Positions 1-37,501 of a stretch of 64,000 bases of DNA are shown here, in pieces (within the stretch, counting starts at the first letter, position 1; the number at the start of each line of letters is the position of its first letter). A program made the position numbers and the translations under genes. The notes beneath the pieces were generated by a model. The model did no database searches, was not told where the DNA came from, and was given only the letters and a program-made list of their open reading frames with translations. Source of the stretch: Isurus oxyrinchus (lineage: Eukaryota); assembly GCA_026770705.1 (NCBI GenBank), contig JANJGN010000052.1, positions 806,001 to 870,000 on the forward strand. Reading direction: 5' to 3'.

Positions 1-1080
1 GGATGAGAGGAAGAGAGAGAGAGATATGGAGCAGGAGAACACCTCCTCCGGTCCCGATGTTCCTCCAAAATCTCTGACATTACTGCATCTCCCGGGTCCC
101 CCTGATTCCCATCGCTCCACCATTGGTGGCCGTGCCTTCAACTGCCTGGGGCCCTGAGCTCCGGAATACCCTCCCTTTACCTCTCTGCCTCTGTCTCTTT
201 CTCTCTCTCTCTCCTTTAAGACGCTCCTTAAAAACTGACATCTTTGACCAAGCTTTTGGTCACCTAACCCTAATATCTCCATATGTGACTCAGTGTTAGA
301 CTTCTCTCTGATTTACGCTCCGGTAATGTGGGCTGGGACATTTTTCAATGTCAGAGGCGCTGTGTAAATGCAAGTTGTGAGTGTTATGTGGAAGGGAGAC
401 CCCAGGCGGCAGTCAGTGCCAGAGACTGGAGTCATTGTGTGCAGACCATATCTAATCTCTCCGAATGCACAATCGGTTTGACTGTCAGCCAAAGCACTTT
501 TGATATTTGATCCTTCTAACTGTTTATAACCAGGCCTACATCAAACACCGAGAGGCTGGTTAATCAACAGACACCTTAGAGGATCGAGTGAAAGACAAAG
601 AGGACTTGCATTTCTCTAGCGCCTTCCAACACATCAGGACGTCCCAAACTGTTTCGCGGACAATCAAGTGCTTTTTTTCTTTCATGTGAGGTCACTGATG
701 TACTGTGGGAAAAGAATCAGCCATTGGCGCACAGTAAGATCCCACAGACAGCAGCATGATAATGACCAGCGCGCTCCCAGTACTTGCACTGCAAGTGTCA
801 GTTCAGGATGTGTGCTCGATTCTCTGCAACTCTCAGCTCTGAGTTAAAAGGACCACCAGGCATAATTGAGAAATTACCGAGCTGTCGGAGGGTCAGTACC
901 GGCGGGGGGGCAGGACAGTCGGAGGGTCAGTACTGAGGGGGTGCTGCATTGTCAGACGGTCAGTCTTGGAGTGCTGCACTGTCAGAGGGTCAGTACCGGC
1001 GGGGGACTGCACAGTCGGAGGGTCAGTACTGAGGGGGTGCTGCATTGTCAGACGGCCAGTACTGAGGGAGTGCTGCACTG
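1..1080. repeat. Inverted segmental duplicate of ~37866-38924 (HAMP-like intron 2)
   Basis: ORF 328-510(+) is nearly identical to ORF 38437-38619(-), and ORF 866-1183(+) matches ORF 37833-38081(-). Base 1 aligns to 38924 in reverse complement; similarity ends inside the 33-bp array. Confidence 0.93.
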
Positions 1081-1560
1081 TTGGAGGGTCAGTACTGAGG
1101 GGGTGCTGCATTGTCAGACGGTCAGTACTGAGGGAGTGCTGCACAGTCGGAGGGTCAGTACTGAGGGGGTGCTGCACTGTTGAAGGCGCTGTCTTTCAGA
1201 TGAGATGTTAAACTGAGACAACATCTGCCCTCTCAGATGGATGTAGAGGATTCCATGGCCACAATTTAAATGAAGTGCGTCAGGAGTTGGGGGTATGTGT
1301 GGAGGGGGTGGTGGGGGGTGGATGGGGTGGAGTTATGTCCGCTTTCCTGGGGCAAACATTTATCCCTCAACTGACATTGGTAAAAAACTGAAAATCGGGG
1401 CCATTATCACATTTCTGTTTGTGGGATCTTGCTGTGCGTGAATTGCCTGCTGCGTTTCCTACATTACAGCGGTGAGCTCACTTCAGAAAAAGTCCTTCCT
1501 TCAGCTGTGGAACACTTTGGGCCATCCTGAGGAGGGGAAAGGCGCTATAGAAATGCGGCA
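883..1560 (+). mobile_element. DeuSINE-like (SacSINE1/AmnSINE-type) SINE with tandemly amplified 33-bp unit
   Basis: Array of cagtactgagggagtgctgcactgtcggagggt runs into gtctttcagatgagatgttaaac...tgtttgtgggatcttgctgtgcg...aaaggcgctatagaaatgc. Family name is from recall, not a search. Confidence 0.65.
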
Positions 1561-1645
1561 TCCTCGTTCCAATGACGCGCCTGATTGAAATGATGCCTTC
1601 TTTCTTTCCGGAATGTTCTCACCTATTGTCCTCCTGCTTTTCCAG

Positions 1646-1762
1646 GGCTCCTTGCTGCAGCGCCAGAACAGAATGAGCAGACAGCGGCACTGCAGATTCG
1701 GCTGTCACTGCTGTAATTGGAGAGAATCAAATGAGACTCGTGGTATCTGCTGCATATTTTAG
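1646..1762 (+). CDS. HAMP: Hepcidin-like exon 3 (end of pro-region, RxxR site, 6-Cys mature peptide)
   Basis: Acceptor ctcctgcttttccag, then phase 0 GSLLQRQNRMSRQRHCRFGCHCCNWRESNETRGICCIF*. Fits the hepcidin pattern CxxCCxCC..CGxCCxF with two Cys substituted. Its intron is duplicated downstream of HAMP-like exons 1-2. Confidence 0.8.
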   Translation, partial: GSLLQRQNRMSRQRHCRFGCHCCNWRESNETRGICCIF

Positions 1763-2467
1763 ACCCTGGCCTCATTCACGCAAGGTCATCCTGCACCATG
1801 CCACAGCCTCTCCCCTCCTTATCTACTGCTTAGCAATCTATTTAACACAGGCCCTGTTCATTAATTCCAACTGAAACTTTACCTGCGTTTTACAGCAGGG
1901 AAAGAAGCCATTCGGCCCATCTGCTCCATGCTGGTGTTTCTGCTCCACACGAGTCTCCGCCCACCCCTTCTCCATCTCACCCCATCACCATATCCTTCTA
2001 TTCATTTCTCCCTCGTGTGTTTATCCAGCTTCCCCTTAAATACATCGACACTATTCACCTCACGTGACTGTGTTTGTGTCTGTCTTTATGAGCGTGTGTA
2101 TGTGTGTATGTGTGTGACTGTCAATATGTGTGTGTCAATGTGAATGAGTGAGTGTGTCAGTGTGTCTGTGTGGGTGTGTGTGACTGTGTCAGTGTGTGTC
2201 AATGTGAATGAGTCAGTGTGTCAGTGTGTCTGTGTGGGTGTGGGTGTGTGAGTGTGCAAGTGAATGTGTGAGGAATCTTATGACTAAGTCATTTGAATGG
2301 ATGTTACTGGGGTTAATGATAGTTAAAATTCAGAGAGATGTAAAGCGGGCTCCTGATTTTGCTGCTTTATGCTCCCGGGCACAGATTCACCCCGACAATG
2401 TGTTCATGATTCACCATTATCTTGTCGGGACTTTAATTGTAAAGATGATGATTTGTAAAAAAAAATG

Positions 2468-2473
2468 AATAAA
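2468..2473 (+). terminator. Candidate polyadenylation signal for the hepcidin-like gene
   Basis: AATAAA about 700 nt after the stop codon at 1762. Confidence 0.3.
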
Positions 2474-4106
2474 CAACTTTTGTCTTCACAAAGTGTCTGG
2501 CTTGGTATTTCAGGCTACTTGTCTCTCCCTCACCCTCCCCCCCCACCATGCCCCCCACACCAGGGAACAATTGTCCCCCCTTCCTCTGAAGTTCGGGGTA
2601 AAGATCAGCTTTGTTCAATGCAAGCTGTTCCGACATCGAGAACGTTGTTACAAATATCTCACAAAGGGCACACGCCATGATAGCCCACTTTCAACAGATT
2701 TTACCAGTTGACCAGGTTGAAAACCTTTTCATAAACCACAACGTAGGTGTTCAATTCTTGCTGCTGTTTGCTTAATGTTCTCATAACTGCTATAACCTCT
2801 CTAGTTCCACTACATAACAACACCAACATAAATAAACAGAAGCAGGAGTAGGCCTTTTGGCCCCCCAAGCCAGCTTGTCCATTCAATTTGAACCTGGCTC
2901 CTGCTGAAAGTTATTTAAGTTGAAGCGATAAAGCCATCAGGTGCAGGGATTAAAATGTAAGCAAAGGAAAAATAATACTTAGACATGAGATTTAAAATCA
3001 GTTTCTGTCAAGTATCATAGTGAGGCCCATTGCTCTGGATTCCTTCTTTCCAGAGTGAAGGGTTTGAAACTAGGAGTCACATTCAGCAGCTGCATTGTCT
3101 TCTCTAGTTGACTGTTTGGAGGTTGCCTGTAGATGTGAATCAGCAGGTCAGCAGCTTTGAGGAATGAGTGAAGGTCCCTTTTATTTACAGGATCTGCCAG
3201 AGGATGTGCAGGAATATTCCTGCTGAATCCCCCATCCTTGTATTCATGAAGGTTTTGAAACTGGAAGTCATATTCAGCAGCTGCAATGGCCTTTGTAGTC
3301 AACTGTCTGGAGGTTGCCTGTACAGGTGGACTCGGCATGTCAACAGCTTTGTTGGGCGGGGGACACAGGTAGTGAAGGTCCCTTTTCTTTAACGGCTCTG
3401 CCAGTGCAAAACTTGATGATCCTGGGTCAAAATCATGTAACTCCCTCCCCAAAAGCACTGTGGGTGTGACCTATGGAGGTTCCTTGGCTTCGACAAGCAG
3501 CCTACCAGCTCTGCTCTCAATTCCTCTTCGCACTTGCTTCCTTCCTCCTCTGGTCTTTACTTTGTTATAGTGTTAGTGTCCGCTCTGCCTTTTTTGTTGC
3601 TTTCCCAATTCTTCCCACCAACTCTCTCTGGCTTGATCCTTCTCTGTGCTCATCTCATTGGTTTGGGTTTCTATCCGTTCATTGACCTGGTGTAATCTGA
3701 AACTGGTGCAATCAGGTAGGGGTGGGGGGGTTGGCGCTGGCCGTGGGTGGTGATACACGTTACCTTTTTACCAAAATTCTTTCACGGGATGTGGACAGCG
3801 TTTGTTACCTGTTCCTGACCGACCCCTTGAGAAGGGGGTGCTGAGCTGCCTTTTCGAAGTGCTGCAGTTCGCCTGGTTTGACTGGTCTGTGGCGGGTTTT
3901 GATATAACTCAGTGGCTTGCTCAGCCATTTCAGGGGCCAGTTAAGAGTCAACCACATTGCTGTGGGTCAGGAGTCACACGTAGGCCAGAATGGGTAAGGA
4001 CGGCAGGTTTCCTTCCCCAAAGGGCATTAGTGACCCAGATGGGTTTTTGCAACAATTGGCCTTAGTTTCATGGTCACCATTACTGAGACTAGCTTCGCAT
4101 TCCAGA

Positions 4107-5190
4107 TGTCACATCCAGTCGTGGACAATTAAACAACTCACTGGAGGAGGAGGCTCCACAAATATCCCCATCCTCAATGATGGAGGAGCCCAGCACATCG
4201 GTGCAAAAGACAAGACTGAAGCATGCGCAACAATCTTCAGCCAGAAGTGCTGAGTGGGTGATCCATCTCGGCCTCCTCCGGAGGTCCCCAGCATCAGAGA
4301 TGCCAATCTTTAGCCAATTCGATTAATTCCACGTGATATCAAGAAAGGGCTGAAGGCACTGGATATTGCAAAGGCTCCAGGCCCTGACAATATTCTGGCA
4401 ATAGTACTGAAGACTTGTGCTCCAGAACTTGCTGCGCCCCTAGCCAAGCTTTTCTGGAATTTTCTAGTACAGCTGCAACACTGGCAACTACCCGGCTATG
4501 GGGTACGTCCTGTACACAAAAAGCAGGACAAATCCAACCCAGCCAATTACCCAGCAGTCTATTCTTGATCATTACTAAAGTGATTGAAGGGGTCATCAAC
4601 AGCGCTTGCAAGCAGCACCTGCTTAGCAAGAACCTGCTCACTGATGCTCTGTTTGTGTTCCACCAGGATCATTCAGCTCCTGGCCTCATTACAGCCTTGG
4701 TTCAAACATGCACAAATGAGCTGAACTCCAGAGGTGAGGTGAGAGGGACTGCCCTTGACATCAAGGCAGCATTTGACTGAATGTGGCAAAACAAGGAGCC
4801 CGAGCAAAACTGGAGTCAATGGGAATCGGGGGAAAACTCTCCGCTGCTTGGAGTCATACCCAGCACAAAGGAAAATGGTTGTGATTATTGGGGGTCAATC
4901 ATCTCAGTTCCAGGACATCACTGCAGGAGTTACTCAGGGTAGTGTCCTAGGCTCAACCATCTTCAGCTGCTTCATCAATGTCCTTCCTTCCATCATAAGG
5001 TCAGAAGTGGGGATGTTTGCTGATGATTGCACAATGTTCAGCACCATTCACGGCTCCTCAGATACTGAAGCAAGTTATGTCCAAATGCAGCAAGACCTGG
5101 ACAACATCCAGGCTTGGGCTGACAGGTGACAAGTAACATTCATGCCACACAAGTGCCAGGCAATGACCAGCTCCAACAAGAGACAATCTC
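4107..5190 (+). mobile_element. CR1-group LINE reverse transcriptase fragment (degenerate)
   Basis: Motifs ALDIKAAFD, GVTQGSVLG..IFSCFIN and MFADD spread across frameshifted ORFs 4415-4780 and 4755-5129. Confidence 0.88.
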
Positions 5191-11427: not shown

Positions 11428-14400
11428 GTTCCACACTGATGGTTATGAACCCATCCACTGCTCCATGTTCTTTCTCTGCCACACACTGATAGTCTCCAGT
11501 GTCCCTGGATGTAACATGAGGAATCACCAACCACAGCTCATTGTTGGAACTTGTTCTGTTCATTTGGACATTCAGATGTCATGGCAGGAATCAAGAAGCC
11601 CGTTCACAAGATTACCAACAGAAAGTGAACAACAATTTATACTTAATGGGAAGAGAGTGCTGATTGGTTGGCAAGTGGTCTCTGATAGGTGGAGATGTTG
11701 CCATGGAGAATGGTGTGTGCGAGATGTAAAGTTTAGACAGCTTGTCTCTTCATTCAGCAATAATCAAATAAAGATCAATTAACTTCTATCGACTTTGAAG
11801 CACTTAGAGAGGCCTTAGAATGTGGATACTGAGAACGGGCTGCACTGTCAGAGGGTCAGTGCTAAGGGAGTGCTGATGTAGAATGAATGGTGCATGTAAT
11901 TACCTTGCACAGTTAGTACGAGGGTCCGCTCCGATGAAACAGATGGATATCTCACTCTGCAGCTGAGAGTGTGTCCGTGGTGTTTGAGTGATGGGATCAG
12001 GGTCAGAACAGAAGTATAGGTCAGAGTGACACCATGCTGAGTTACAGTGTTTGAGACTGATCCAGGTACGTCAGTGGGAGTGTCCCAGGTTAAGACAGGT
12101 GCTGCTGTTCCATTGTACGTTGTGTTGAAGGTGCAGCTTACATCCACACGCTTTTCTGCAATAATTTCAGCAGGGAATATCGTGGGTTTATCTGTGAAAT
12201 CTAACACACAGAGAATGGATCATTTTAGAGAAATATAACGTGAAGCATCAGTTCAAATAGAAACCACAGTCCCACACGAGAAAGCACTTTGACAAGGATG
12301 ATATCAGAACTGAGAGGTTACAACGATCAGGAAAGATTTTCTTGCTCTTTGGCAGTAGTGTTTCTGTCTCTCAGCTTAATACACGTTCACTCCGAGACAT
12401 GTGAATTGAGAACACTGGATGAGAGAAGAGGCTGAGACCAGAGATTGGAGTTAAAAGCAGAATACTGTGGATGCTGGAAATCTGAAACAAAAACAAAAAT
12501 TGCTGGAAAGACTCAGCAGGTCTGACAGTATCAGTGGAGAGGAAGACAGGGTTAACGTTTCGAGTCCGTATGACTCTTCATCAGACCAGAGGTTTGAGTT
12601 CACTGGCTTCTCATTTCCTCAGTGATCTGGGTGATTTATCACCTTGTGGTTTGTTGGATCTTGCTGTGCACAAACTGCCTGCTGTGTTTTACATCTGTGA
12701 CTACAATTCAGGAATAATTTCATTGGCTGTGAAGGGATTTGGATTCTCCTGAGGTGGTAAATTGCGCTGCAGAAATGCACATCTTTCTTTTATCGATACG
12801 TCAGACTTTTAAACAGGACAGGAGAGATTGATGGGTGTGGTAATCTGAGAATACAGTTAATGCTTTTCATCAGTGATACTAAAGTGAGTATTGGAGGTTG
12901 CTTTTGGACTGAACTGGAAGCTATCACCAGGTTATTGAGAATCAGACAGTGTGTTATAATAAGCTGTGTTTTGTGTTAATATGTAAATGTCACAGTTTGT
13001 GTTATTCCCATTGAGTGTTGAATGTGAATTGTTGAGTAATTATAACACAGCACTTACCAGAAACGTGAAGCTGGGTTACAGGATAGTAGCTGTAACTATT
13101 CCTGCTGTCAAATTCTATTCTGAAAAAAATAAGGTCCTGCATCTTTCCGTCTGATGTTGTTTATAATCAGGGAACAGTCGCCATCTTTCAGGTCTCCAAA
13201 CAGCCGGGTACGATGGCGGAATCTTTGATCCCTGTGACTGTGACCCTCGGAGTGAAAGGCTATAGACCATTTAGGCTGTAGGGTTCCCATCTATTCCTTT
13301 CAACCAGATTCCGACACGTGATCTCCCTACGAAATGTGATGATTAACTGTAATGACATGGAATTTGTACACAGGAACCTTCCTGCGCTGTCACCTCTCGT
13401 GGAGTGTCGCCTTTCCACTCTTGTGACAGTCCAATTGGAGAGAGAAATGTCAATATTTAACTCTGGAAGGTTTGTAGATCCAGTAGACTCGATATCCACC
13501 CCCTCCATCACTGGGGCACAGTGGCTGCAGTGTGGACCATCTACAGGACACACATGGAATTCCCCAAGGTTTCACAATGGATGGAAGAGAATCCTGGACA
13601 CAGGAGTGGACAAGTTCATTCTACATTGGCTCATGGTCCTCAGGACCCTGTTTAGTGAAGCCAGTCTTCCACCCAACACAGTGTCTACAAGATACACAGG
13701 GAAACTGTGTAAATATCTCATCTCTCTAAACTGACTGGCTTGGCTTCGGTTTAACTTTCAGTATTTTTAAATTTCCATATTGTGGTTGCTATGGTGAAAC
13801 TGTGCAGGAAGAGTGAGGGCTGGACTCTCTGTCTATTCTCACTGCATCTGTGATGTGGTCGTGGTGATTCTCAGTAAAATGAAACCCTCTGATCTCCTCC
13901 ATCCCCGAGGTTTAGGGAGTGAATTCCAGAGCTCAGGCCCCAGGCAGCTGAAGGCACGGCCGCCAGTATTGGAGTGATGGGAATCGGGGGATGGTCAAGA
14001 GGCCGGAATTGGAGTGACACAGAGATCTGGGAAGTTGTTTGGTTGAGTTGCAGGAGGTTTCAGAGATTAAGAGATAAGAATGATCTTTTACAAAGACTGT
14101 TAAACATAAATCTGTCTGAGCTGATGATGATATTACCTTGGGAAAGTGACAAGAGGAAGTAGATTTCCCGATCATCGTCCACTCCCAGATATTCCATCCA
14201 CTTCTCACTCTCAAGCTGTGAAAGAGAAAGGAGTTAATGAGACGTCACCTCTTGTCCGAATGCTCTCGAGAGATCAGAACTGCTTTTAGACAATGTCTTC
14301 ACAGACTAATTTGATTCTCTGTGGGATGATAGGTGCTCTGCAGAGAGTTACAAGGCTTTAAGAAAGAAGAACATTGAAGGATTTGCATTTCTATAGCACC

Positions 14401-21262: not shown

Positions 21263-21304
21263 ATGAGCTAATAACACGAGAACGTTCAATTCTGTGTAAC
21301 TCAC

Positions 21305-21586
21305 GTTCCACAGAGATGGTTATAAATCCCTCCACTGCTCCATGTTCATTCTCTGTCACACACTGATAGTCTCCAGTGTCCCTGGATGTAACGTGAGGAA
21401 TCACCAACCACAGCTCATTGTTGGAACTTGTTCTGTTCATTGGGACATTAAGATGTCGCCACGTCAGGTTAGAAGCTGGGAAGCTCTCGACAGAGCAGAT
21501 TATCACTGCAGAATTCCCCTCAATTATATTGATCGATGAAGCATTAATCATATCAAGAGAAGTAACTGAGAGATTCCGTGGAGCAT
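21305..21586 (-). CDS. Siglec-like gene B, C2-set Ig exon (last C2b copy)
   Basis: 282 nt, phase 1-1, AG/GT sites; APRNLS..IICSVESFPASNLTW..DTGDYQCVTENEHG..ISVE. Confidence 0.9.
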
Positions 21587-22328
21587 CTAAAAACAAATAA
21601 AGATTTTAATGTGAGCAAGCACAGTGCACAGCAAGACTCCATGCATCATCTCTCTGTATCTGATATTGGAATGCATTTCCAGGTACCTTCCCTCAGGAAA
21701 AAATACTGCCACATTTATAATGGGCACTTCCTATGTAAACTGTCACACTGCAGTTGCATTCTCCCACCAACAGAGTTGCTGTCCACCTAGAATGAAAGAA
21801 ACATCCTTTAACACTCTCAAGATGCCCCCAAGGGATTGAAAGCCCGTGAATTGTATTTGATTGATGGAGCACTGAGGAGTAAATCTACAATTCTCCGTTC
21901 AGGAAGTTGCTCATCCAATTCAGGATCTTGCTGATCTGGAGTTTACCTTCCTTCAACACAGAATCAGAGCTGATACCGAGACTCCAGTGCAGCACTGAGA
22001 GAGGGGAGGGATCTCACACTTGTGTGTGTGTGTGTATTTCTGCACAAGTGAGTTTGTATTTGTGTGTATGCGCGTGTCTGTCTGCGCATGTGTGGGCATG
22101 CGTGTGTATGTGGGTCTTGTGTGTACATCTGTGCTTGAATGAGTGTGTGTGTATACGTGTGTCTACGTGTGCGCATGAATGATTGTACGTGTGAGTTGAG
22201 TTTGTGTGTGTTTCTGTGTATGTGTTTGAATGTATGTTTGTGTGTAAACGTGCATGTTTGTGTCTACACATGAGTGTTTTTGCATGTGTGAGTGTGTGTG
22301 TGTGATGTAGATGTCTGTGTGCACTCAC

Positions 22329-22610
22329 ATTCCACAGTGATGGTTATGAATCCCTCCACTGCTCCATGTTCATTCTCTGCCACACACTGATAGTCTCCAG
22401 TGTCCCTGGATGTAAGGTGAGGAATCACCAACCACAGCTCATTGTTGGAACTTGTTCTGTTCATTGGGACATTAAGATGTCGCCACGTCAGGTTAGAAGC
22501 TGGGAAGCTCTCGACAGAGCAGATTATCACTGCAGAATTCCCCTCAATTATATTGATCGATGAAGCATTAATCATTTCAAGCGAAGTAAATGAGAGATTC
22601 TGTGGTGCAT
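22329..22610 (-). CDS. Siglec-like gene B, C2b exon copy
   Basis: 282 nt, phase 1-1, intact C-W-DxGxYxC Ig core. Confidence 0.9.
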
Positions 22611-23210
22611 CTAAAAACAAATCAAGTGTTTAATGTGAGCAAGCTCAATTTACAGCAAGACTCCATGCATCATCTCTCTGTATCTGATGTCTGTATGCAA
22701 TTCCGGGTACCTTCCCTCCTTATAACTTCCACTGTCAAATTTATAATGGACACTGCCTATGTAAACAGTCAAACTGCAGTTACATTCTCCCACCAGTAGA
22801 GGTGCTGTCCACCTAGAATGAAAGAAACTTTCACATCCTCTGGATTTTGCCAAGGGATTTACGGGAATGAATTGTATTTGATCGATGGAGCACTGAGGGG
22901 TAAATCTACAATTCTCTGTTCAGGAGGTTGCTCATCCAATTCAGGGTCTTGCTGATCTGGAGTTTACCTTCCTTCAACACAGAATCAGAGCTGATACCAA
23001 GACTCCAGTGCGGCACTGAGAGAGGAGAGGGACCTCATGTGTGTGTATGTGTTTGTGTTTATGTTTCTGCACAAGTGAGTGTGTTTGTGTGAGTATGCAC
23101 GCATGCGTCTGTGTGTGCGTGTGTGTATGTGTTTGCTCATATGTGAGTGTGTCTTTGTGTATATTTCTGTGCATGAGTGAATGTGTGTGTATGTTTATGA
23201 GTATGTGTGT

Positions 23211-23273
<63 letters not shown>

Positions 23274-23299
23274 TGATGTTGAAGTTTGCAGTAACTCAC

Positions 23300-23581
23300 G
23301 TTCCACAGTGATGGTTATGAACCCCTCCACTGCTCCATGTTCATTCTCTGCCACACACTCATAGTCTCCAGTGTCCCTGGATGTAACGTGAGGAATCACC
23401 AACCACAGCTCATTGTTGGAACTTGTTCTGTTCATTGGGACATTAAGATGTCGCCACGTCAGGTTAGAAGCTGGGAAGCTCTCGACAGAGCAGATTATCA
23501 CTGCAGAATTCCCCTCAATTACATCAATCGATAAAGCGTTAATCACACCAAGAGAAGTAATTGAGAGATTCCGTGGTGCAT
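23300..23581 (-). CDS. Siglec-like gene B, C2b exon copy
   Basis: 282 nt, phase 1-1, intact Ig core. Confidence 0.9.
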
Positions 23582-24181
23582 CTATAAACATAGAAAGATT
23601 TTAATATGAGCAAATATAGTGCACAGCAAGACTCCATGCATCATGTCTCTGTATCTGATGTCTGAATGCATTTCCAGGTACATTCCCTCAGGATAAGAAC
23701 TTATTTCACATTTACAATGGGCACTGCCTATGTAAACTGTCACACTGCAGTTACATTCTCCCACCAGTGGAGGTGTCCATCTAGAATGCAGGAAACTCCC
23801 TTTCAGATCCTCAGGATGTCCGCAAGGGCTTCAAAGGCAATGAATTGTATTTGATCAATGGAGCACTGAGGGGTAAATCTACAATTCACTGTTCAGGAGG
23901 TTGCTCCATGCAGTTCAGTGTCTTGATGATCTGGAGTTTACCTTCCTTCAACACAGATTCGGAGCTGATACTGAGACTCCAGTGCAGCACTGGGAGAGGA
24001 GAAGGAACCCACATGTTTTTGTGTGTGTATGTGTGTGTTGGCTTGTGTGTGTATGTTTCTGTAAAATAAGGATCTGTGTGTGTGCACGCACTCATGTGTG
24101 TTTGTGTGTGTGTGCGCACGTGTGTCTGTCTATGCATGTGTGTGTGTGTGCTTGTGTGAGTTGAGATTGTGTATGTTTCTG

Positions 24182-24232
<51 letters not shown>

Positions 24233-24265
24233 GTGTGAGTGATGTTGAAGTTTGCATTAACTCAC

Positions 24266-24358
24266 ATTCCACAGTGATGGTTATGAACCCCTCAATTATA
24301 TTGATCGATGAAGCATTAATCATATCAAGCGAAGTAAATGAGAGATTCTGTGGTACAT
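24266..24358 (-). CDS. Siglec-like gene B, internally deleted C2b mini-exon (31 aa)
   Basis: 93 nt encoding DVPQNLSFTSLDMINASSINIIEGFITITVE; both splice sites intact and frame preserved. Confidence 0.7.
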
Positions 24359-24577
24359 CTAAGAACAATTAAAGATTTCATTGTGAACAAGACTCAGTAC
24401 TGAGGGAGTGCTGCAGTGTTGGAGAATCAGTATTCAGGGACTGCTGCAGTGTCAGAGGTGAATTTGTATCAGTTAAAGACTATTGATTTGTTGCTAAACG
24501 CAATGCAGTTGTGGGATCTTGCAATGTACTATGTAGAGCTTTCTAGCTAATGTAGAATGAAGGGTGTCCATTCTTAC

Positions 24578-24874
24578 CTTGCACAGTTAGTACGAGGGTC
24601 CGCTCCGATGAAACAGATGGATATCTCACTCTGCAGCTGAGTGTGTGTCCGTGGTGTTTGAGTGATGGGATCAGGGTCAGAACAGAAGTATAGGTCAGAG
24701 TGACACCATGCTGAGTTACAGTGTTTGAGACTGATCCAGGTACGTCAGTGGGAGTGTCCCAGGTTAAGACAGGTGCTGCTGTTCCATTGCACGTTGTGTT
24801 GAAGGTGCAGCTTACATCCACACGCTTTCCTGCAATAATTTCAGCAGGGAATATCATGGGTTTATCTGTGAAAT
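24578..24874 (-). CDS. Siglec-like gene B, first C2-set exon (C2a)
   Basis: 297 nt, phase 1-1; DFTDKP..VSCTFNTTCNGTAAPVLTW..YTSVLTLIPS..HGHTLSCRV. The extra Cys matches the Siglec V-C2 interdomain bond. Confidence 0.92.
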
Positions 24875-25732
24875 CTAACAGACAGAGAATGGATCCTTTT
24901 AGAGAAATATAACGTGAAGCATCAGTTCAAATAGAAACCACAGTCCCACAAGAGAAAGCACTTTTACAAGGATGATATCAGAACTGAGAGGTTACAATGA
25001 TCAGGAAAGATTTTCTTGTTCTTTGGCAGTAGTGTTTCTGTCTCTCAGCTTAATACACGTTCACTCCGAGACATGTGAATTGAGAACACTGGATGAGAGA
25101 AGAGGCTCAGACCAGAGATTGGAGTTAAAAGCAGAATACTGCGGATGCTGGAAATCTGAAACAAAAACAAAAATTGCTGGAAAGACTCAGCAGGTCTGAC
25201 AGTATCAGTGGAGAGGAAGACAGGGTTAACGTTTCGAGTTCGTATGACTCTTCATCAGACCAGAGGTTTGAGTTCACTGGCTTCTCATTTCCTCAGTGAT
25301 CTGGGTGATTTATCACCTTGTGGTTTGTTGGATCTTGCTGTGCACAAACTGACTGCTGTGTTTAACATCTGTGACTACAATTCAGGAATAATTTCATTGG
25401 CTGTGAAGGGATTTGGATCCTCCTGAGGTGGTAAATTGCGCTGCAGAAATGCACATCTTTCTTTTATCGATAAGTCAGACTTTTAAACAGGACAGGAGAG
25501 ATTGATGGGAGTGGATAACCTGATAATACAGTTAATGCTTTTCATCAGTGATATTAAAGTGATTTTAGAGGTTGCTTTAGGACTGAACTGGAAGCTGTCA
25601 GCAGGTTATTGAGAATCAGACAGTGTGTTATAATAAGCTGTGTTTTGTGTTAATATGTAAATGTCACAGTTTGTGTTATTTCCCATTGAGAGTTGAAAGT
25701 GAATTGTTGAGTAATTATAACACAGCACGTAC

Positions 25733-26098
25733 CAGAAACGTGAAGCTGGCTTACAGGATAGTAGCTGTATTTATTTCTGCTGTCAAATTCTATTCTGAAA
25801 AAATAAGGTCCTGCATCTTCCCGTCTGATGTTGTTTATAATCAGGGAACAGTCACCATCTTTCATGTCTCCAGACAGCCGGGTCCGATGGTGGAACCGAG
25901 GTAACTCGTGACTGTGATCCTTGGAGTGAAAGGCTATAGACGATGTTCTCCATTCCTCATTAGTAAACCAGATTCCAACTCGTGGTTGCTTTTCCAAATG
26001 TGATGGATAACTGTAATGACATGGAATCTGTACACAGGAACCTTCCTGCGCTGTCACCTCTCGTGGAGTGTCACCTTTCCACTCTTGTGACAGTCCAA
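25733..26098 (-). CDS. Siglec-like gene B, V-set sialic-acid-binding exon
   Basis: 366 nt, phase 1-1. EW..GSCVQIPC..GDCSL..DAGPYFFRIE..NKYSY shows the B-E strand Cys pair, no F-strand Cys, and the essential Arg. Confidence 0.93.
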
Positions 26099-27460
26099 CT
26101 GTGGAGAGAAATATCAATACTTAATTCTGGATGTTTTTTCAATCCATTAGACTTGATATCCACCCCCTCCATCACTGGGGCACATTGGCTGCAGTGTGGA
26201 TCATCTACAGGACACACAAGGAACTCCTCAAGGTTTCACAATGGATGGAAGAGAATCCTGGACGCAGGAGTGGACAAGTTCATTCTACATTAGCTCATGG
26301 TCCTCAGGACACTGTTTAGCTTTTTTTCAAATTATTCATTCATGGGATTTATTACCCATCCCATGTCCATCAGAGGTATTTAAGAGTCAACCACATAGCT
26401 TTGGGTTTGAAGTGACATGTAGGCCAGACTGGGTAAGAGTGGCAGATTTCCTTCCCTATAGGTGATCAGTGAACCAGGCTTTTTAATCCCATTCATCTGC
26501 TGTGATAGGATTCACACCCAGGGCCCCAGAGCATCACCCTGGGCCTCTGGAATACTAGCCCAGTGACAATACCTCTCTGCTACCACTTCCCCTTAGTGAA
26601 GCCAGTCTTCCACCCAACACAGTGTCTACAAGACGCACCAATTGAGATCCATTCAGTGCTGATTTACAAGACAGGACAATGGATTAGGAGCCCTCAGAAC
26701 TCCCCCCATTATCACCGTCATGAATCACTAATTAGCCTAACATTCCTGTCTGCTCTTCAACACAGCTGATTGGCTAATCTGATTCAATCTGATTGGTGTT
26801 CATTCCCTCTTCAATGTTTAAGGAATCACCAATCACTCGGCCTCTAGTTATTCTCCTGCCCACAAGAGGGAACATTCTCTGTCTACCCAGTCAATCAAAA
26901 CCTTTCATCTAAACCTAGTGGTGCTTGAGTATATAGTCGGGAATCCAGGGCAATGGAGCCTCAGGAGAAGAGATGGAAACCCTGTGAGGTGGAACGTCAC
27001 TGAGGCCATCCGAGTTGAAGCGACTTTTGGAGAGAATTCCGAGGCAAGATCTTCGAAGTTGAAGACTGGAATCCCTCATGAGAGAAACAGAGTTTCAGTG
27101 AGATTGGTTGACTGACAGTGTTCACTGATGTCCGGGTGGGTTGTTGTGAAATCCATGGGATCTGTCTTGGTCGCGTTTACAATTTAATGAGTAATGTGGC
27201 TGTGAGACCACAGTTTGCCTGTTAATTCACATGAGCTCATATTAACCCAGCATGTTAGGGTATAAGGTGGACATTGTGAATTATTTTATCTTTCTGAGCT
27301 GGTGCAGTAAAGTTTATTTTTGTTTGTTTAAAAGCCATGGAATCTTGTAGCTCTATTCTCTTTGCAAGCGTCTTAAATCTCAAACCTCGTCTACTTGAAA
27401 CAAAATATTATTGGTTCCTAACTGTAAATTATCAAAAAAAATTGGGTGCCTGTTCCTCCA

Positions 27461-37252: not shown

Positions 37253-37501
37253 TCAGTTATGCTCGAACCTGATCTGTGCGTATTCCGTCTCCTCTTCCCT
37301 GTGGACAGACCCATCATCACTGGACATCCTCAATACTTGGGGATTGGCGTAGAGAAGGCCGTTGGGATTGTCGATGTGCCAATGTCCAGCATCGCCTCCC
37401 AATGCACCTTCAGAGAGACCCCGGGGAGCTGGGGTCTCCCCCTCACTAGTTGTGTCTCTGGTTGTGTTCTGGGGCTCAGTAATCAGCACGTTCTGTTTAC
37501 C
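37253..37501 (-). CDS. Siglec-type terminal cytoplasmic exon; candidate exon 3 of a HAMP-Siglec chimera
   Basis: ctctgtag|GKQNVLITEPQNTT...LLYANPQV...TEYAQIRFEHN*, phase 0. AATAAA(-) at 36720-36725. Confidence 0.8.
   Translation of the reverse strand, partial: GKQNVLITEPQNTTRDTTSEGETPAPRGLSEGALGGDAGHWHIDNPNGLLYANPQVLRMSSDDGSVHREEETEYAQIRFEHN

What the first reader, a model, noticed from the sequence alone, without database searches (positions are those of the whole stretch)
1646..1762. Atypical six-cysteine hepcidin-like peptide with an extended, glycosylatable loop
Seen: RQNR followed by MSRQRHCRFGCHCCNWRESNETRGICCIF*. Established: hepcidins have 8 Cys (human pairing C1-C8, C2-C4, C3-C6, C5-C7), a loop of about 4 residues, and an N-terminal DTHF/QSHL-type segment needed for ferroportin activity. 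Here C2 is Gly (GGC) and C6 is Arg (CGT), each one base from a Cys codon. The loop is 8 aa with an N-E-T sequon, and the N-terminus is cationic without that motif. Inference: a divergent antimicrobial-type paralogue with rewired disulfides (C3 and C4 left free), or a decaying copy. With exons like those at 41475 and 39582 the precursor would be 88 aa, a typical hepcidin length.
Basis: partly seen in the sequence, partly recalled or inferred. Interest (0 to 1): 0.8.

Follow-up and report, generated by a model that had tools for sequence, protein, structure and literature searches.

The report
Shark hepcidin copy missing two cysteines
This is the last exon of one copy in a shark's fast-changing family of hepcidin (iron-hormone and defence peptide) genes, and its two missing cysteines look like recent private damage to this copy, not a designed new peptide.

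Summary
The sequence is in the window exactly as described. A good splice acceptor precedes an open exon, 1646-1762, encoding GSLLQRQNR|MSRQRHCRFGCHCCNWRESNETRGICCIF*.

It is a real hepcidin-family exon 3. It aligns without gaps to annotated basking-shark and catshark hepcidins (BLASTP E 2e-9). Pfam Hepcidin scores 20 bits, below its cut-off of 27. Siglec/CD22-like exons lie around it.

The 8-residue loop and 29-residue mature length are not atypical. Conserved shark hepcidins from two orders share them.

Only the six-cysteine state is special, and I could not confirm it independently. In three runs with the same species label, 5 of 5 contigs read T (Cys) at 1700 and 6 of 6 read T (Cys) at 1739. 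One of those runs behaves as RNA and shows very strong transcription of near-identical eight-cysteine relatives. Contigs can drop rare variants, so this is not proof of absence.

The two lost cysteines belong to different disulfide pairs (recalled connectivity). That fits damage better than a tidy paired loss.

My best reading is a recently crippled copy or allele in a redundant, diversifying family (0.55). A working six-cysteine defence peptide remains possible (about 0.2).

Exons 1-2 of this gene lie outside the window and were not read. The scan had already found this hepcidin family on other DNA of this genome.

The parts
1..1645 (+). 3' part of intron 2 of the left hepcidin gene; exons 1-2 lie upstream of the window. 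It holds a SINE-derived 33-bp array at 882-1180 and ends in a polypyrimidine tract plus AG at 1644-1645.
   Evidence: Depth in the RNA-like run X1 is about 1.2e3 here against 1e5-9e5 in the exon and UTR.
1646..1762 (+). Exon 3 coding part: the pro-region end GSLLQRQNR, a 29-aa mature peptide with 6 Cys, and the stop TAG at 1760-1762.
1700..1702 (+). GGC (Gly) in the column of the 2nd cysteine. All 5 contigs laid here read TGC (Cys).
1739..1741 (+). CGT (Arg) in the column of the 6th cysteine. All 6 contigs laid here read TGT (Cys).
1730..1738 (+). N-E-T sequon inside the 8-residue loop.
   Evidence: No difference is listed between 1727 and 1739 in the eight-Cys relative contig of X7.
1763..2490 (+). 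Probable 3' UTR shared with close relatives, with AATAAA at 2468-2473. The end coordinate is approximate.
   Evidence: X1 depth stays at 1e5-9e5 up to bin 2422-2468, then falls to 1.4e4 and about 140. AATAAA is at 2468.
37761..38889 (-). Inverted duplicate of window 50-1186 (96.7% identical): intron 2 of a second, truncated hepcidin copy. The match breaks inside the 33-bp array.
41475..41567 (-). Exon 1 of the truncated right-hand copy (signal peptide, 31 codons, donor GTAAG). It stands only as a proxy for the unseen exon 1 of the left gene.
   Evidence: 30 of 32 residues, 93.75%, identical to Cetorhinus P0002.
39582..39638 (-). Exon 2 of the truncated right-hand copy (19 codons, VDTALGSSTIEKSVDSPDT).

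Best explanation
Window 1646-1762 is the third and last exon of a member of the shark 'long-loop' hepcidin lineage. That lineage has a 29-residue mature peptide and an 8-residue loop. The gene sits in a Siglec/CD22-like cluster that has been duplicated and rearranged.

The family's mature-peptide exon changes far faster than its introns and UTR, and close eight-cysteine relatives are transcribed at very high level. This copy has replaced the hydrophobic ferroportin-type N-terminus with Arg/Gln/His. It has a weaker processing site, RQNR rather than RQRR or REKR. It also carries two private, derived single-base changes, TGC to GGC and TGT to CGT, that remove the 2nd and 6th cysteines.

Those cysteines belong to two different disulfides, so two bonds are broken and two cysteines are left without partners. 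I read this as recent loss of function in one redundant copy or one haplotype, not as an engineered six-cysteine peptide.

Shown here: family membership, the derived state of the two changes, exon-focused divergence, and the lack of any transcript contig carrying them. Inferred: loss of function.
For: Family membership:
- The exon aligns gap-free to P0002, P0003 and P0004.
- Pfam Hepcidin hits it at 20 bits. The like-for-like 38 residues of P0002 score 37.9 bits.
- The long loop is shared by Cetorhinus P0002 and Scyliorhinus P0003.
- Siglec/CD22-like V-set and C2-set exons lie in the window.

The two changes are private and derived:
- All three annotated shark hepcidins have Cys in both columns.
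- 5 of 5 contigs at 1700 and 6 of 6 at 1739 read T. At 1700: X1 3 contigs, X2 1, X7 1. At 1739: X1 4, X2 1, X7 1.
- Every other exon letter in which the window differs from one contig is seen in some other contig. These two are not.

Expression:
- X1 depth jumps about 100-fold at the acceptor and falls just after AATAAA.
- Its contigs nearest to this copy carry Cys codons. One example is a 76-nt contig at 1645-1715 with only 2 differences and depth 9717.

Diversifying family:
- Against the 863-nt X7 contig there are 12 differences in 114 coding bases (11 change the residue) and 8 in 701 flanking bases. Fisher p = 1.6e-6.

Other points:
- The region is prone to rearrangement: an inverted duplicate has lost exon 3.
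- By recalled connectivity (C1-C8, C2-C4, C3-C6, C5-C7), C2 and C6 are not partners.
Against: - Exon 3 has no stop or frameshift. Its acceptor and poly(A) signal are intact.
- An even number of cysteines remains, so a three-disulfide fold is conceivable.
- Only about 19% of random single changes remove a Cys, so two of two has a chance of 0.035. That could hint at selection rather than drift.
- Teleost hepcidins with 6 or 4 Cys exist (PMC9039748, passage read).
- The read evidence is from Logan contigs only, which drop rare variants. Only about 65% of X2 was read. No run held more than 0.68 of the sampled words, so the assembled animal is probably not among the runs.
- Exons 1-2 and the promoter of this gene lie outside the window and could not be read.
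Confidence: 0.55

Rival explanations
1. It is a working six-cysteine, cationic, possibly N-glycosylated defence peptide. After losing C2 and C6, the orphaned C3 and C4 (Cys-His-Cys) bond to each other or stay as reactive thiols. The peptide acts on microbes, not on ferroportin.
For: - The exon is open, with an intact acceptor and poly(A) signal.
- The cysteine count is even.
- Net charge is +3 plus 2 His.
- The family shows exon-focused amino-acid change typical of defence peptides.
- Reduced-cysteine hepcidins are known in teleosts (PMC9039748).
- Two of two private exon changes hitting Cys codons has a chance of 0.035.
Against: - The lost cysteines come from different disulfide pairs (recalled connectivity), so two bonds break at once.
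- No contig, RNA-like or DNA, carries either letter.
- The processing site is weakened to RQNR, while most transcripts read K at that residue: 185,093 of 194,810 depth at 1669.
- The Pfam score is 18 bits below that of an intact shark exon.
- No structure or chemistry could be tested because the structure tool was off.
Confidence: 0.2
2. The six-cysteine state is not a property of a distinct gene. It is either a rare allele of an expressed eight-cysteine gene in the one assembled animal, or a consensus artefact of assembling many near-identical copies.
For: - Neither letter is seen in any of 5 and 6 contigs from three runs.
- An X1 contig matches the window across 1645-1715 except at 1700 and 1706, so it could be the same locus in another animal.
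- The window holds many sized N gaps in repeats, which suggests a scaffolded assembly.
- The family is multi-copy, with flanks about 99% alike.
Against: - Substitution errors at just two first positions of Cys codons are unlikely for an assembler.
- The same copy has two further private letters in the intron (1558, 1566), read differently in all four runs, including another species. That fits a separately evolving copy.
- Contigs drop minority paths, so absence is weak evidence.
Confidence: 0.2
3. It is a chance open frame with cysteines in repeat-rich DNA, not a hepcidin exon.
For: Many Cys-rich frames in the window come from TG-rich simple repeats. The big profile-free search with the 38-residue peptide found nothing.
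Against: - Gap-free alignment to shark hepcidins starts exactly at the exon boundary.
- Pfam hits it.
- Depth in the RNA-like run steps up at the acceptor.
- Homologous exons 1-2 sit in the duplicated copy.
Confidence: 0.02

Closest known systems
Shark long-loop hepcidins: Cetorhinus maximus LOC144671611 isoform X2 (P0002) and Scyliorhinus canicula 'hepcidin-2-like' (P0003)
   Same: - The exon 3 boundary is the same (GS(L/V)L...).
- The mature peptide has the same 29 residues after a basic site followed by Met-Ser.
- The spacing is the same: C-x2-C-C-x-C-C-x8-C-x2-C-C with an 8-residue loop.
- The alignment is gap-free, with 45-47% identity to the three annotated shark hepcidins in alignment A1.
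- In the duplicated copy, exons 1 and 2 together match P0002 at 45 of 50 residues, 90%.
- Downstream matches to the alternative 3' exons of the Cetorhinus gene lie at 4667-4777 and 13487-13654 on the same strand. This suggests the same locus.
   Different: - Gly and Arg stand in place of the 2nd and 6th Cys.
- The N-terminus is SRQRH instead of SHLS(V/I).
- The loop is WRESNET with a sequon, instead of the basic K/R-K-G-T/S-K-K-T.
- The processing site is RQNR instead of REKR or RQRR.
- Pfam gives 20 bits against 37.9 for the same 38 residues of P0002.
Teleost hamp2-type and reduced-cysteine hepcidins, e.g. the 4-Cys hepcidin of Dissostichus mawsoni
   Same: These are extra hepcidin copies thought to serve defence rather than iron control (PMC8235187 passage). 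Forms with 6 or 4 cysteines are described (PMC9039748 passage).
   Different: They arose in a separate lineage and by separate duplications. I did not see which cysteines those forms lack. No shark case was found in print.
Human hepcidin-25 (HAMP), the iron hormone
   Same: It has the same family fold signature and a three-exon gene with the peptide in the last exon. Its neighbours are Siglec genes; HAMP next to MAG and CD22 in human is recalled, not tested here.
   Different: Human hepcidin has a 4-residue loop, 8 Cys and an N-terminal DTHFPICIF segment needed for ferroportin binding (recalled; Preza 2011 seen only as an entry in a reference list). This peptide has none of the hydrophobic positions.

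Membership tests
Hepcidin (Pfam PF06446) | Profile score at or above Pfam's gathering cut-off (27 bits) | tested here: not met
   The exon 3 peptide alone scores 20.0 bits, E 8.8e-4. The matching 38 residues of P0002 score 37.9 bits, and whole P0002, P0003 and P0004 score 44.8, 45.2 and 48.6.
Hepcidin (Pfam PF06446) | Sequence homology to bona fide hepcidin precursors over the mature peptide | tested here: met
   BLASTP against P0002 gives 17/36 identities, no gaps, E 2e-9. tblastn of P0002 and P0003 hits 1646-1753 with E 8e-8 and 3e-8. See also alignment A1.
Hepcidin (Pfam PF06446) | Eight cysteines in the pattern C-x2-C-C-x-C-C-loop-C-x2-C-C | tested here: not met
   Six of eight are present, and their spacing is kept. 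Gly stands in the 2nd column and Arg in the 6th.
Hepcidin (Pfam PF06446) | Three-exon gene: signal peptide in exon 1, pro-region in exon 2, basic cleavage site plus mature peptide in exon 3 | tested here: inconclusive
   The acceptor, the minimal R-x-x-R site (RQNR) and the mature peptide are present. This gene's own exons 1-2 lie upstream of the window. Only those of the inverted duplicate were seen. An earlier first-reader note (s1-863653) speaks of a broken donor upstream; I could not check it.
Hepcidin (Pfam PF06446) | Neighbourhood of Siglec (MAG/CD22-type) genes | tested here: met
   V-set / Ig_CD22 exons lie at 25653-26117(-) and 62590-63057(-), and a C2-set exon at 11851-12207(-). The mammalian HAMP-MAG-CD22 adjacency is recalled.
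Iron-hormone type hepcidin (ferroportin ligand) | N-terminal segment with His3 and hydrophobic residues at positions 4, 6 and 8 before the CC pair | tested here: not met
   The window has M-S-R-Q-R-H-C-R-F, against M-S-H-L-S-(V/I)-C-V-Y in P0002 and P0003. Which positions matter is recalled from work on human hepcidin.
Expressed gene | Transcripts that carry this copy's diagnostic letters | tested here: not met
   In the RNA-like run X1 (read whole), 3 of 3 contigs at 1700 and 4 of 4 at 1739 read T. These are contigs only, so absence is not proven.
Processed or unitary pseudogene | Frame-breaking lesion (stop, frameshift, lost splice site) | tested here: not met
   There is none in the part inside the window. 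Only the loss of two structural cysteines and a weakened cleavage site are seen.

The most novel reading that the evidence does not exclude
A working six-cysteine hepcidin derivative in a shark. It would be a cationic, N-glycosylated 29-mer in which simultaneous loss of one cysteine from each of two disulfides is rescued by a new Cys-His-Cys bond or by reactive free thiols. That would give a defence peptide with a fold not described for hepcidins, born inside a rapidly diversifying hepcidin-Siglec cluster.
Probability: 0.15. Interest if true: 0.55.

Novelty: new member of a known kind. Interest (0 to 1): 0.3.

Why it matters
On its own this is probably one damaged member of a multigene family, and that is ordinary.

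The context has more value. Sharks carry a conserved long-loop hepcidin. This genome has multiplied and diversified it next to Siglec genes, with changes concentrated in the mature-peptide exon and very high transcript levels. I found no paper describing this in four searches.

A copy caught just after losing two cysteines could serve as a natural experiment on how much of the four-disulfide cage a hepcidin-type defence peptide needs. That only holds if the copy proves to be real and expressed.

Tried and rejected
Searches that found nothing useful:
- PDB sequence search with the 38-residue peptide gave no hepcidin chain at E up to 10, only chance hits.
- The word search with the exon 3 stretch found no candidate sharing three 5-residue words.
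- The full HMMER search of 1.84 billion representatives with the 38-residue peptide gave 0 hits at E 1e-3 or better. The query is short, so this blank says little.
- Exact look-up of the 49-aa ORF 1613-1759 and of the exon 1 ORF found neither in the collection, which is uninformative.
- Literature searches gave no paper on shark hepcidin families. Hepcidin appears only in passing in PMC9207270 (nurse shark plasma; passage read) and PMC6795676 (a list of fish AMPs; passage read).
- Supplements were not opened. Supplementary gene lists of shark genome papers could name these genes.

No fold or disulfide geometry was tested.

Readings rejected:
- The extended loop as a novelty. It is conserved in P0002 and P0003.
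- The exons at 41475 and 39582 as part of this gene. They belong to the inverted, truncated duplicate, which continues into a Siglec-type tail exon.
- A chance ORF.

Each exon was searched apart.

Full report
WHAT IS THERE

A polypyrimidine tract and AG end at 1645. An open exon follows at 1646-1762. It encodes GSLLQRQNR, then MSRQRHCRFGCHCCNWRESNETRGICCIF, then TAG. Codon 1700-1702 is GGC and codon 1739-1741 is CGT. AATAAA lies at 2468.

IS IT A HEPCIDIN?

Pfam Hepcidin (PF06446) hits residues 5-38 at E 8.8e-4 and 20 bits, below the 27-bit cut-off.

Three searches with the exon peptide found nothing useful:
- the PDB sequence search;
- the word search;
- the full HMMER search of 1.84 billion representatives (a 38-residue query has little power).

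The word search with the exon 1 stretch of the duplicated copy did succeed. It found Cetorhinus maximus LOC144671611 (P0001, P0002). A search with P0002 then found two Scyliorhinus canicula 'hepcidin-2-like' proteins (P0003, P0004) and a third Cetorhinus isoform (P0005).

The window's exon aligns to P0002 from the first exon 3 residue without gaps: 17/36 identities, E 2e-9.

In alignment A1 the six cysteines fall in six of the eight invariant Cys columns. Gly falls in the second column and Arg in the sixth.

Like for like, the same 38 residues of P0002 score 37.9 bits in Pfam. So this exon belongs to the family but is much more diverged.

Siglec/CD22-like V-set and C2-set exons lie at 25.6, 62.6 and 11.9 kb. 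That is the neighbourhood of HAMP in mammals (recalled).

THE LOOP IS NOT THE ODDITY

P0002 has the mature peptide MSHLSVCVYCCGCCNKKGTKKTCGYCCKL. P0003 has MSHLSICVYCCGCCNRKGSKKTCGYCCKL. Both have 29 residues and an 8-residue loop, and they come from two shark orders. P0004 has the usual 4-residue loop.

The window's peptide therefore descends from a conserved long-loop lineage.

Three things set it apart from that lineage:
- Arg, Gln and His replace the H-L-S-(V/I) segment.
- A W-R-E-S-N-E-T loop with a sequon replaces the basic loop.
- The processing site is weaker (RQNR).

In the contigs of a close eight-Cys relative, the N-E-T codons are unchanged. The sequon is therefore a trait of the local subfamily, not of this copy.

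GENE CONTEXT

Window 50-1186 (+) matches 38889-37761 (-) at 96.7%.

On the minus strand, exon 1 (41567-41475) and exon 2 (39638-39582) precede that duplicated intron. The similarity then breaks inside a 33-bp SINE-derived array. The sequence runs on into a terminal exon with tyrosine motifs (LLYANP, TEYAQI), not into a hepcidin exon 3.

tblastn finds only one hepcidin exon 3 in the window.

The true exons 1-2 of this gene lie upstream of the window.

The count 31+19+38 = 88 matches the 88 residues of P0002 and P0003.

The non-hepcidin tails of the Cetorhinus isoforms X3 and X1 match window 4667-4777 (86%) and 13487-13654 (84%). Both lie on the plus strand downstream of exon 3. This suggests that the left gene is the counterpart of that Cetorhinus locus.

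READS

One search listed 24 runs. None held more than 0.68 of the sampled words, so the assembled animal is probably not among them.

I laid 4 of the 24 on 1200-2600. All are kept as Logan contigs:
- X1 (guessed RNA, read whole), organism A;
- X2 (about 65% read), organism A;
- X7 (read whole), organism A;
- X10 (about 50% read), organism C.

X1 behaves as RNA:
- Depth is about 1.2e3 across the intron.
- It rises to about 1e5 in the bin that holds the acceptor.
- It stays at 1e5-9e5 to 2468.
- It falls to 1.4e4 and then to about 140 after the AATAAA.

The family's exon 3 and its roughly 0.7-kb UTR are thus very strongly transcribed.

At 1700, all 5 contigs (X1 3, X2 1, X7 1) read T. At 1739, all 6 contigs (X1 4, X2 1, X7 1) read T. 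Both readings give Cys codons. X10 has no depth over 1623-1857.

The window's other exon letters that differ from some contig (1669, 1676, 1686, 1689, 1706, 1727, 1745-1758) are each seen in another contig. One X1 contig (76 nt, 1645-1715, depth 9717) equals the window except at 1700 and 1706. It has 5 unmatched letters upstream, as a spliced molecule would.

Two intron letters, 1558 and 1566, are also private to the window in all four runs.

These are contigs, which drop minority paths. The result shows that the nearest expressed and assembled relatives have eight cysteines. It does not show that the six-Cys form is absent.

PATTERN OF CHANGE

Against the 863-nt X7 contig, the window differs at 12 of 114 coding bases and at 8 of 701 flanking bases. 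Eleven of the 12 coding differences change the residue. Fisher p = 1.6e-6.

The ratio of 11 replacement changes to 1 silent change is not by itself beyond the neutral expectation (p = 0.30). The excess over the flanks is what points to diversifying change, or patchwork exchange, in the mature peptide. That pattern is usual in defence-peptide families.

About 19% of single-base changes to an eight-Cys version would remove a Cys (64 of 342). Two of two private exon changes doing so has a chance of 0.035.

HOW IT MOST LIKELY WORKS, OR FAILS TO

By the accepted connectivity of human hepcidin (C1-C8, C2-C4, C3-C6, C5-C7; recalled), C2 and C6 are not partners. The older model (C2-C7, C3-C6; recalled) agrees on that point.

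Losing both therefore breaks two disulfides and leaves C3 and C4 orphaned in a Cys-His-Cys triplet. A selected reduction would more simply remove both members of one pair.

Four further points weigh the same way:
- the weakened cleavage site;
- the lack of any contig with these letters;
- the rearranged neighbourhood;

Together these make me read it as a recently disabled copy or haplotype (0.55).

A working six-Cys defence peptide (0.2) is kept alive by three facts:
- the exon is intact;
- the cysteine count is even;
- teleost hepcidins with 6 or 4 cysteines are known (PMC9039748, passage read).

A rare allele or assembly consensus artefact takes another 0.2. A chance ORF is excluded in practice.

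In any reading it is not the iron hormone. The hydrophobic N-terminal positions that P0002 and P0003 keep are gone. Their importance is recalled from work on human hepcidin. PMC8235187 (passages read) notes that second hepcidin genes in fish are not iron regulators.

NOVELTY

It is a new, probably defective, member of a known family.

Earlier follow-ups in this scan had already reported expressed long-loop hepcidin copies and hepcidin-Siglec chimeras elsewhere in this genome. My results agree with them and add two things: the comparison with the conserved Cetorhinus and Scyliorhinus proteins, and the read check of the two Cys positions.

In four literature searches I found no paper on shark hepcidin gene families. 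Supplements were not seen.

Noticed in passing
window 37253-37501 (-), with 39582-39638 (-) and 41475-41567 (-): Hepcidin exons 1-2 of the truncated right-hand copy are followed by a terminal exon, not by a hepcidin exon 3. That exon encodes a cytoplasmic tail with LLYANP and TEYAQI tyrosine motifs (ITIM/ITSM-like). All three exons are phase 0, so an in-frame chimera is possible. Earlier follow-ups in this scan report the hybrid splice in RNA.
   Followed up: partly
window 4667-4777 (+), 13487-13654 (+) and 26151-26318 (+): The non-hepcidin C-terminal parts of Cetorhinus LOC144671611 isoforms X3 and X1 match these stretches at 86%, 84% and 80%. The first looks like a fragment of a retroelement's reverse transcriptase (...LDIKAAFD). 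The match suggests read-through or alternative 3' exons downstream of hepcidin exon 3, conserved between species.
   Followed up: partly
window 25653-26117 (-), 62590-63057 (-), 11851-12207 (-); duplicated blocks 11872-13655 / 24546-26319 / 61970-63099: Siglec/CD22-like V-set and C2-set exons lie in at least three duplicated blocks at 84-95% identity. This is a multiplied Siglec-like cluster around the hepcidin copies.
   Followed up: partly
window 21291-24293 and 56962-61472: About 1-kb tandem units, 84-97% alike, occur in two arrays. The second is broken by many sized N runs. TG-rich stretches in them give spurious Cys-rich frames.
   Followed up: no
window 40445-41273 (-): Intron 1 of the right-hand copy holds a long array of about 37-bp units (...ctccctatctctgtaacctcctccagcccctacaacc...), about 80% alike.
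   Followed up: no
window 1558 and 1566: Two intron letters (G in the window) are read as C in every contig of all four runs laid, including another species. They are private letters of this copy and would serve as copy-specific markers.
   Followed up: partly
window 1200-2014: The run X7 is labelled DNA? and has only 142 million letters of contigs. It holds one 863-nt contig at depth 16.6 that spans intron, exon 3 and UTR of an eight-Cys relative. For so small a data set this looks more like unspliced RNA or an enriched library than whole-genome DNA.
   Followed up: no
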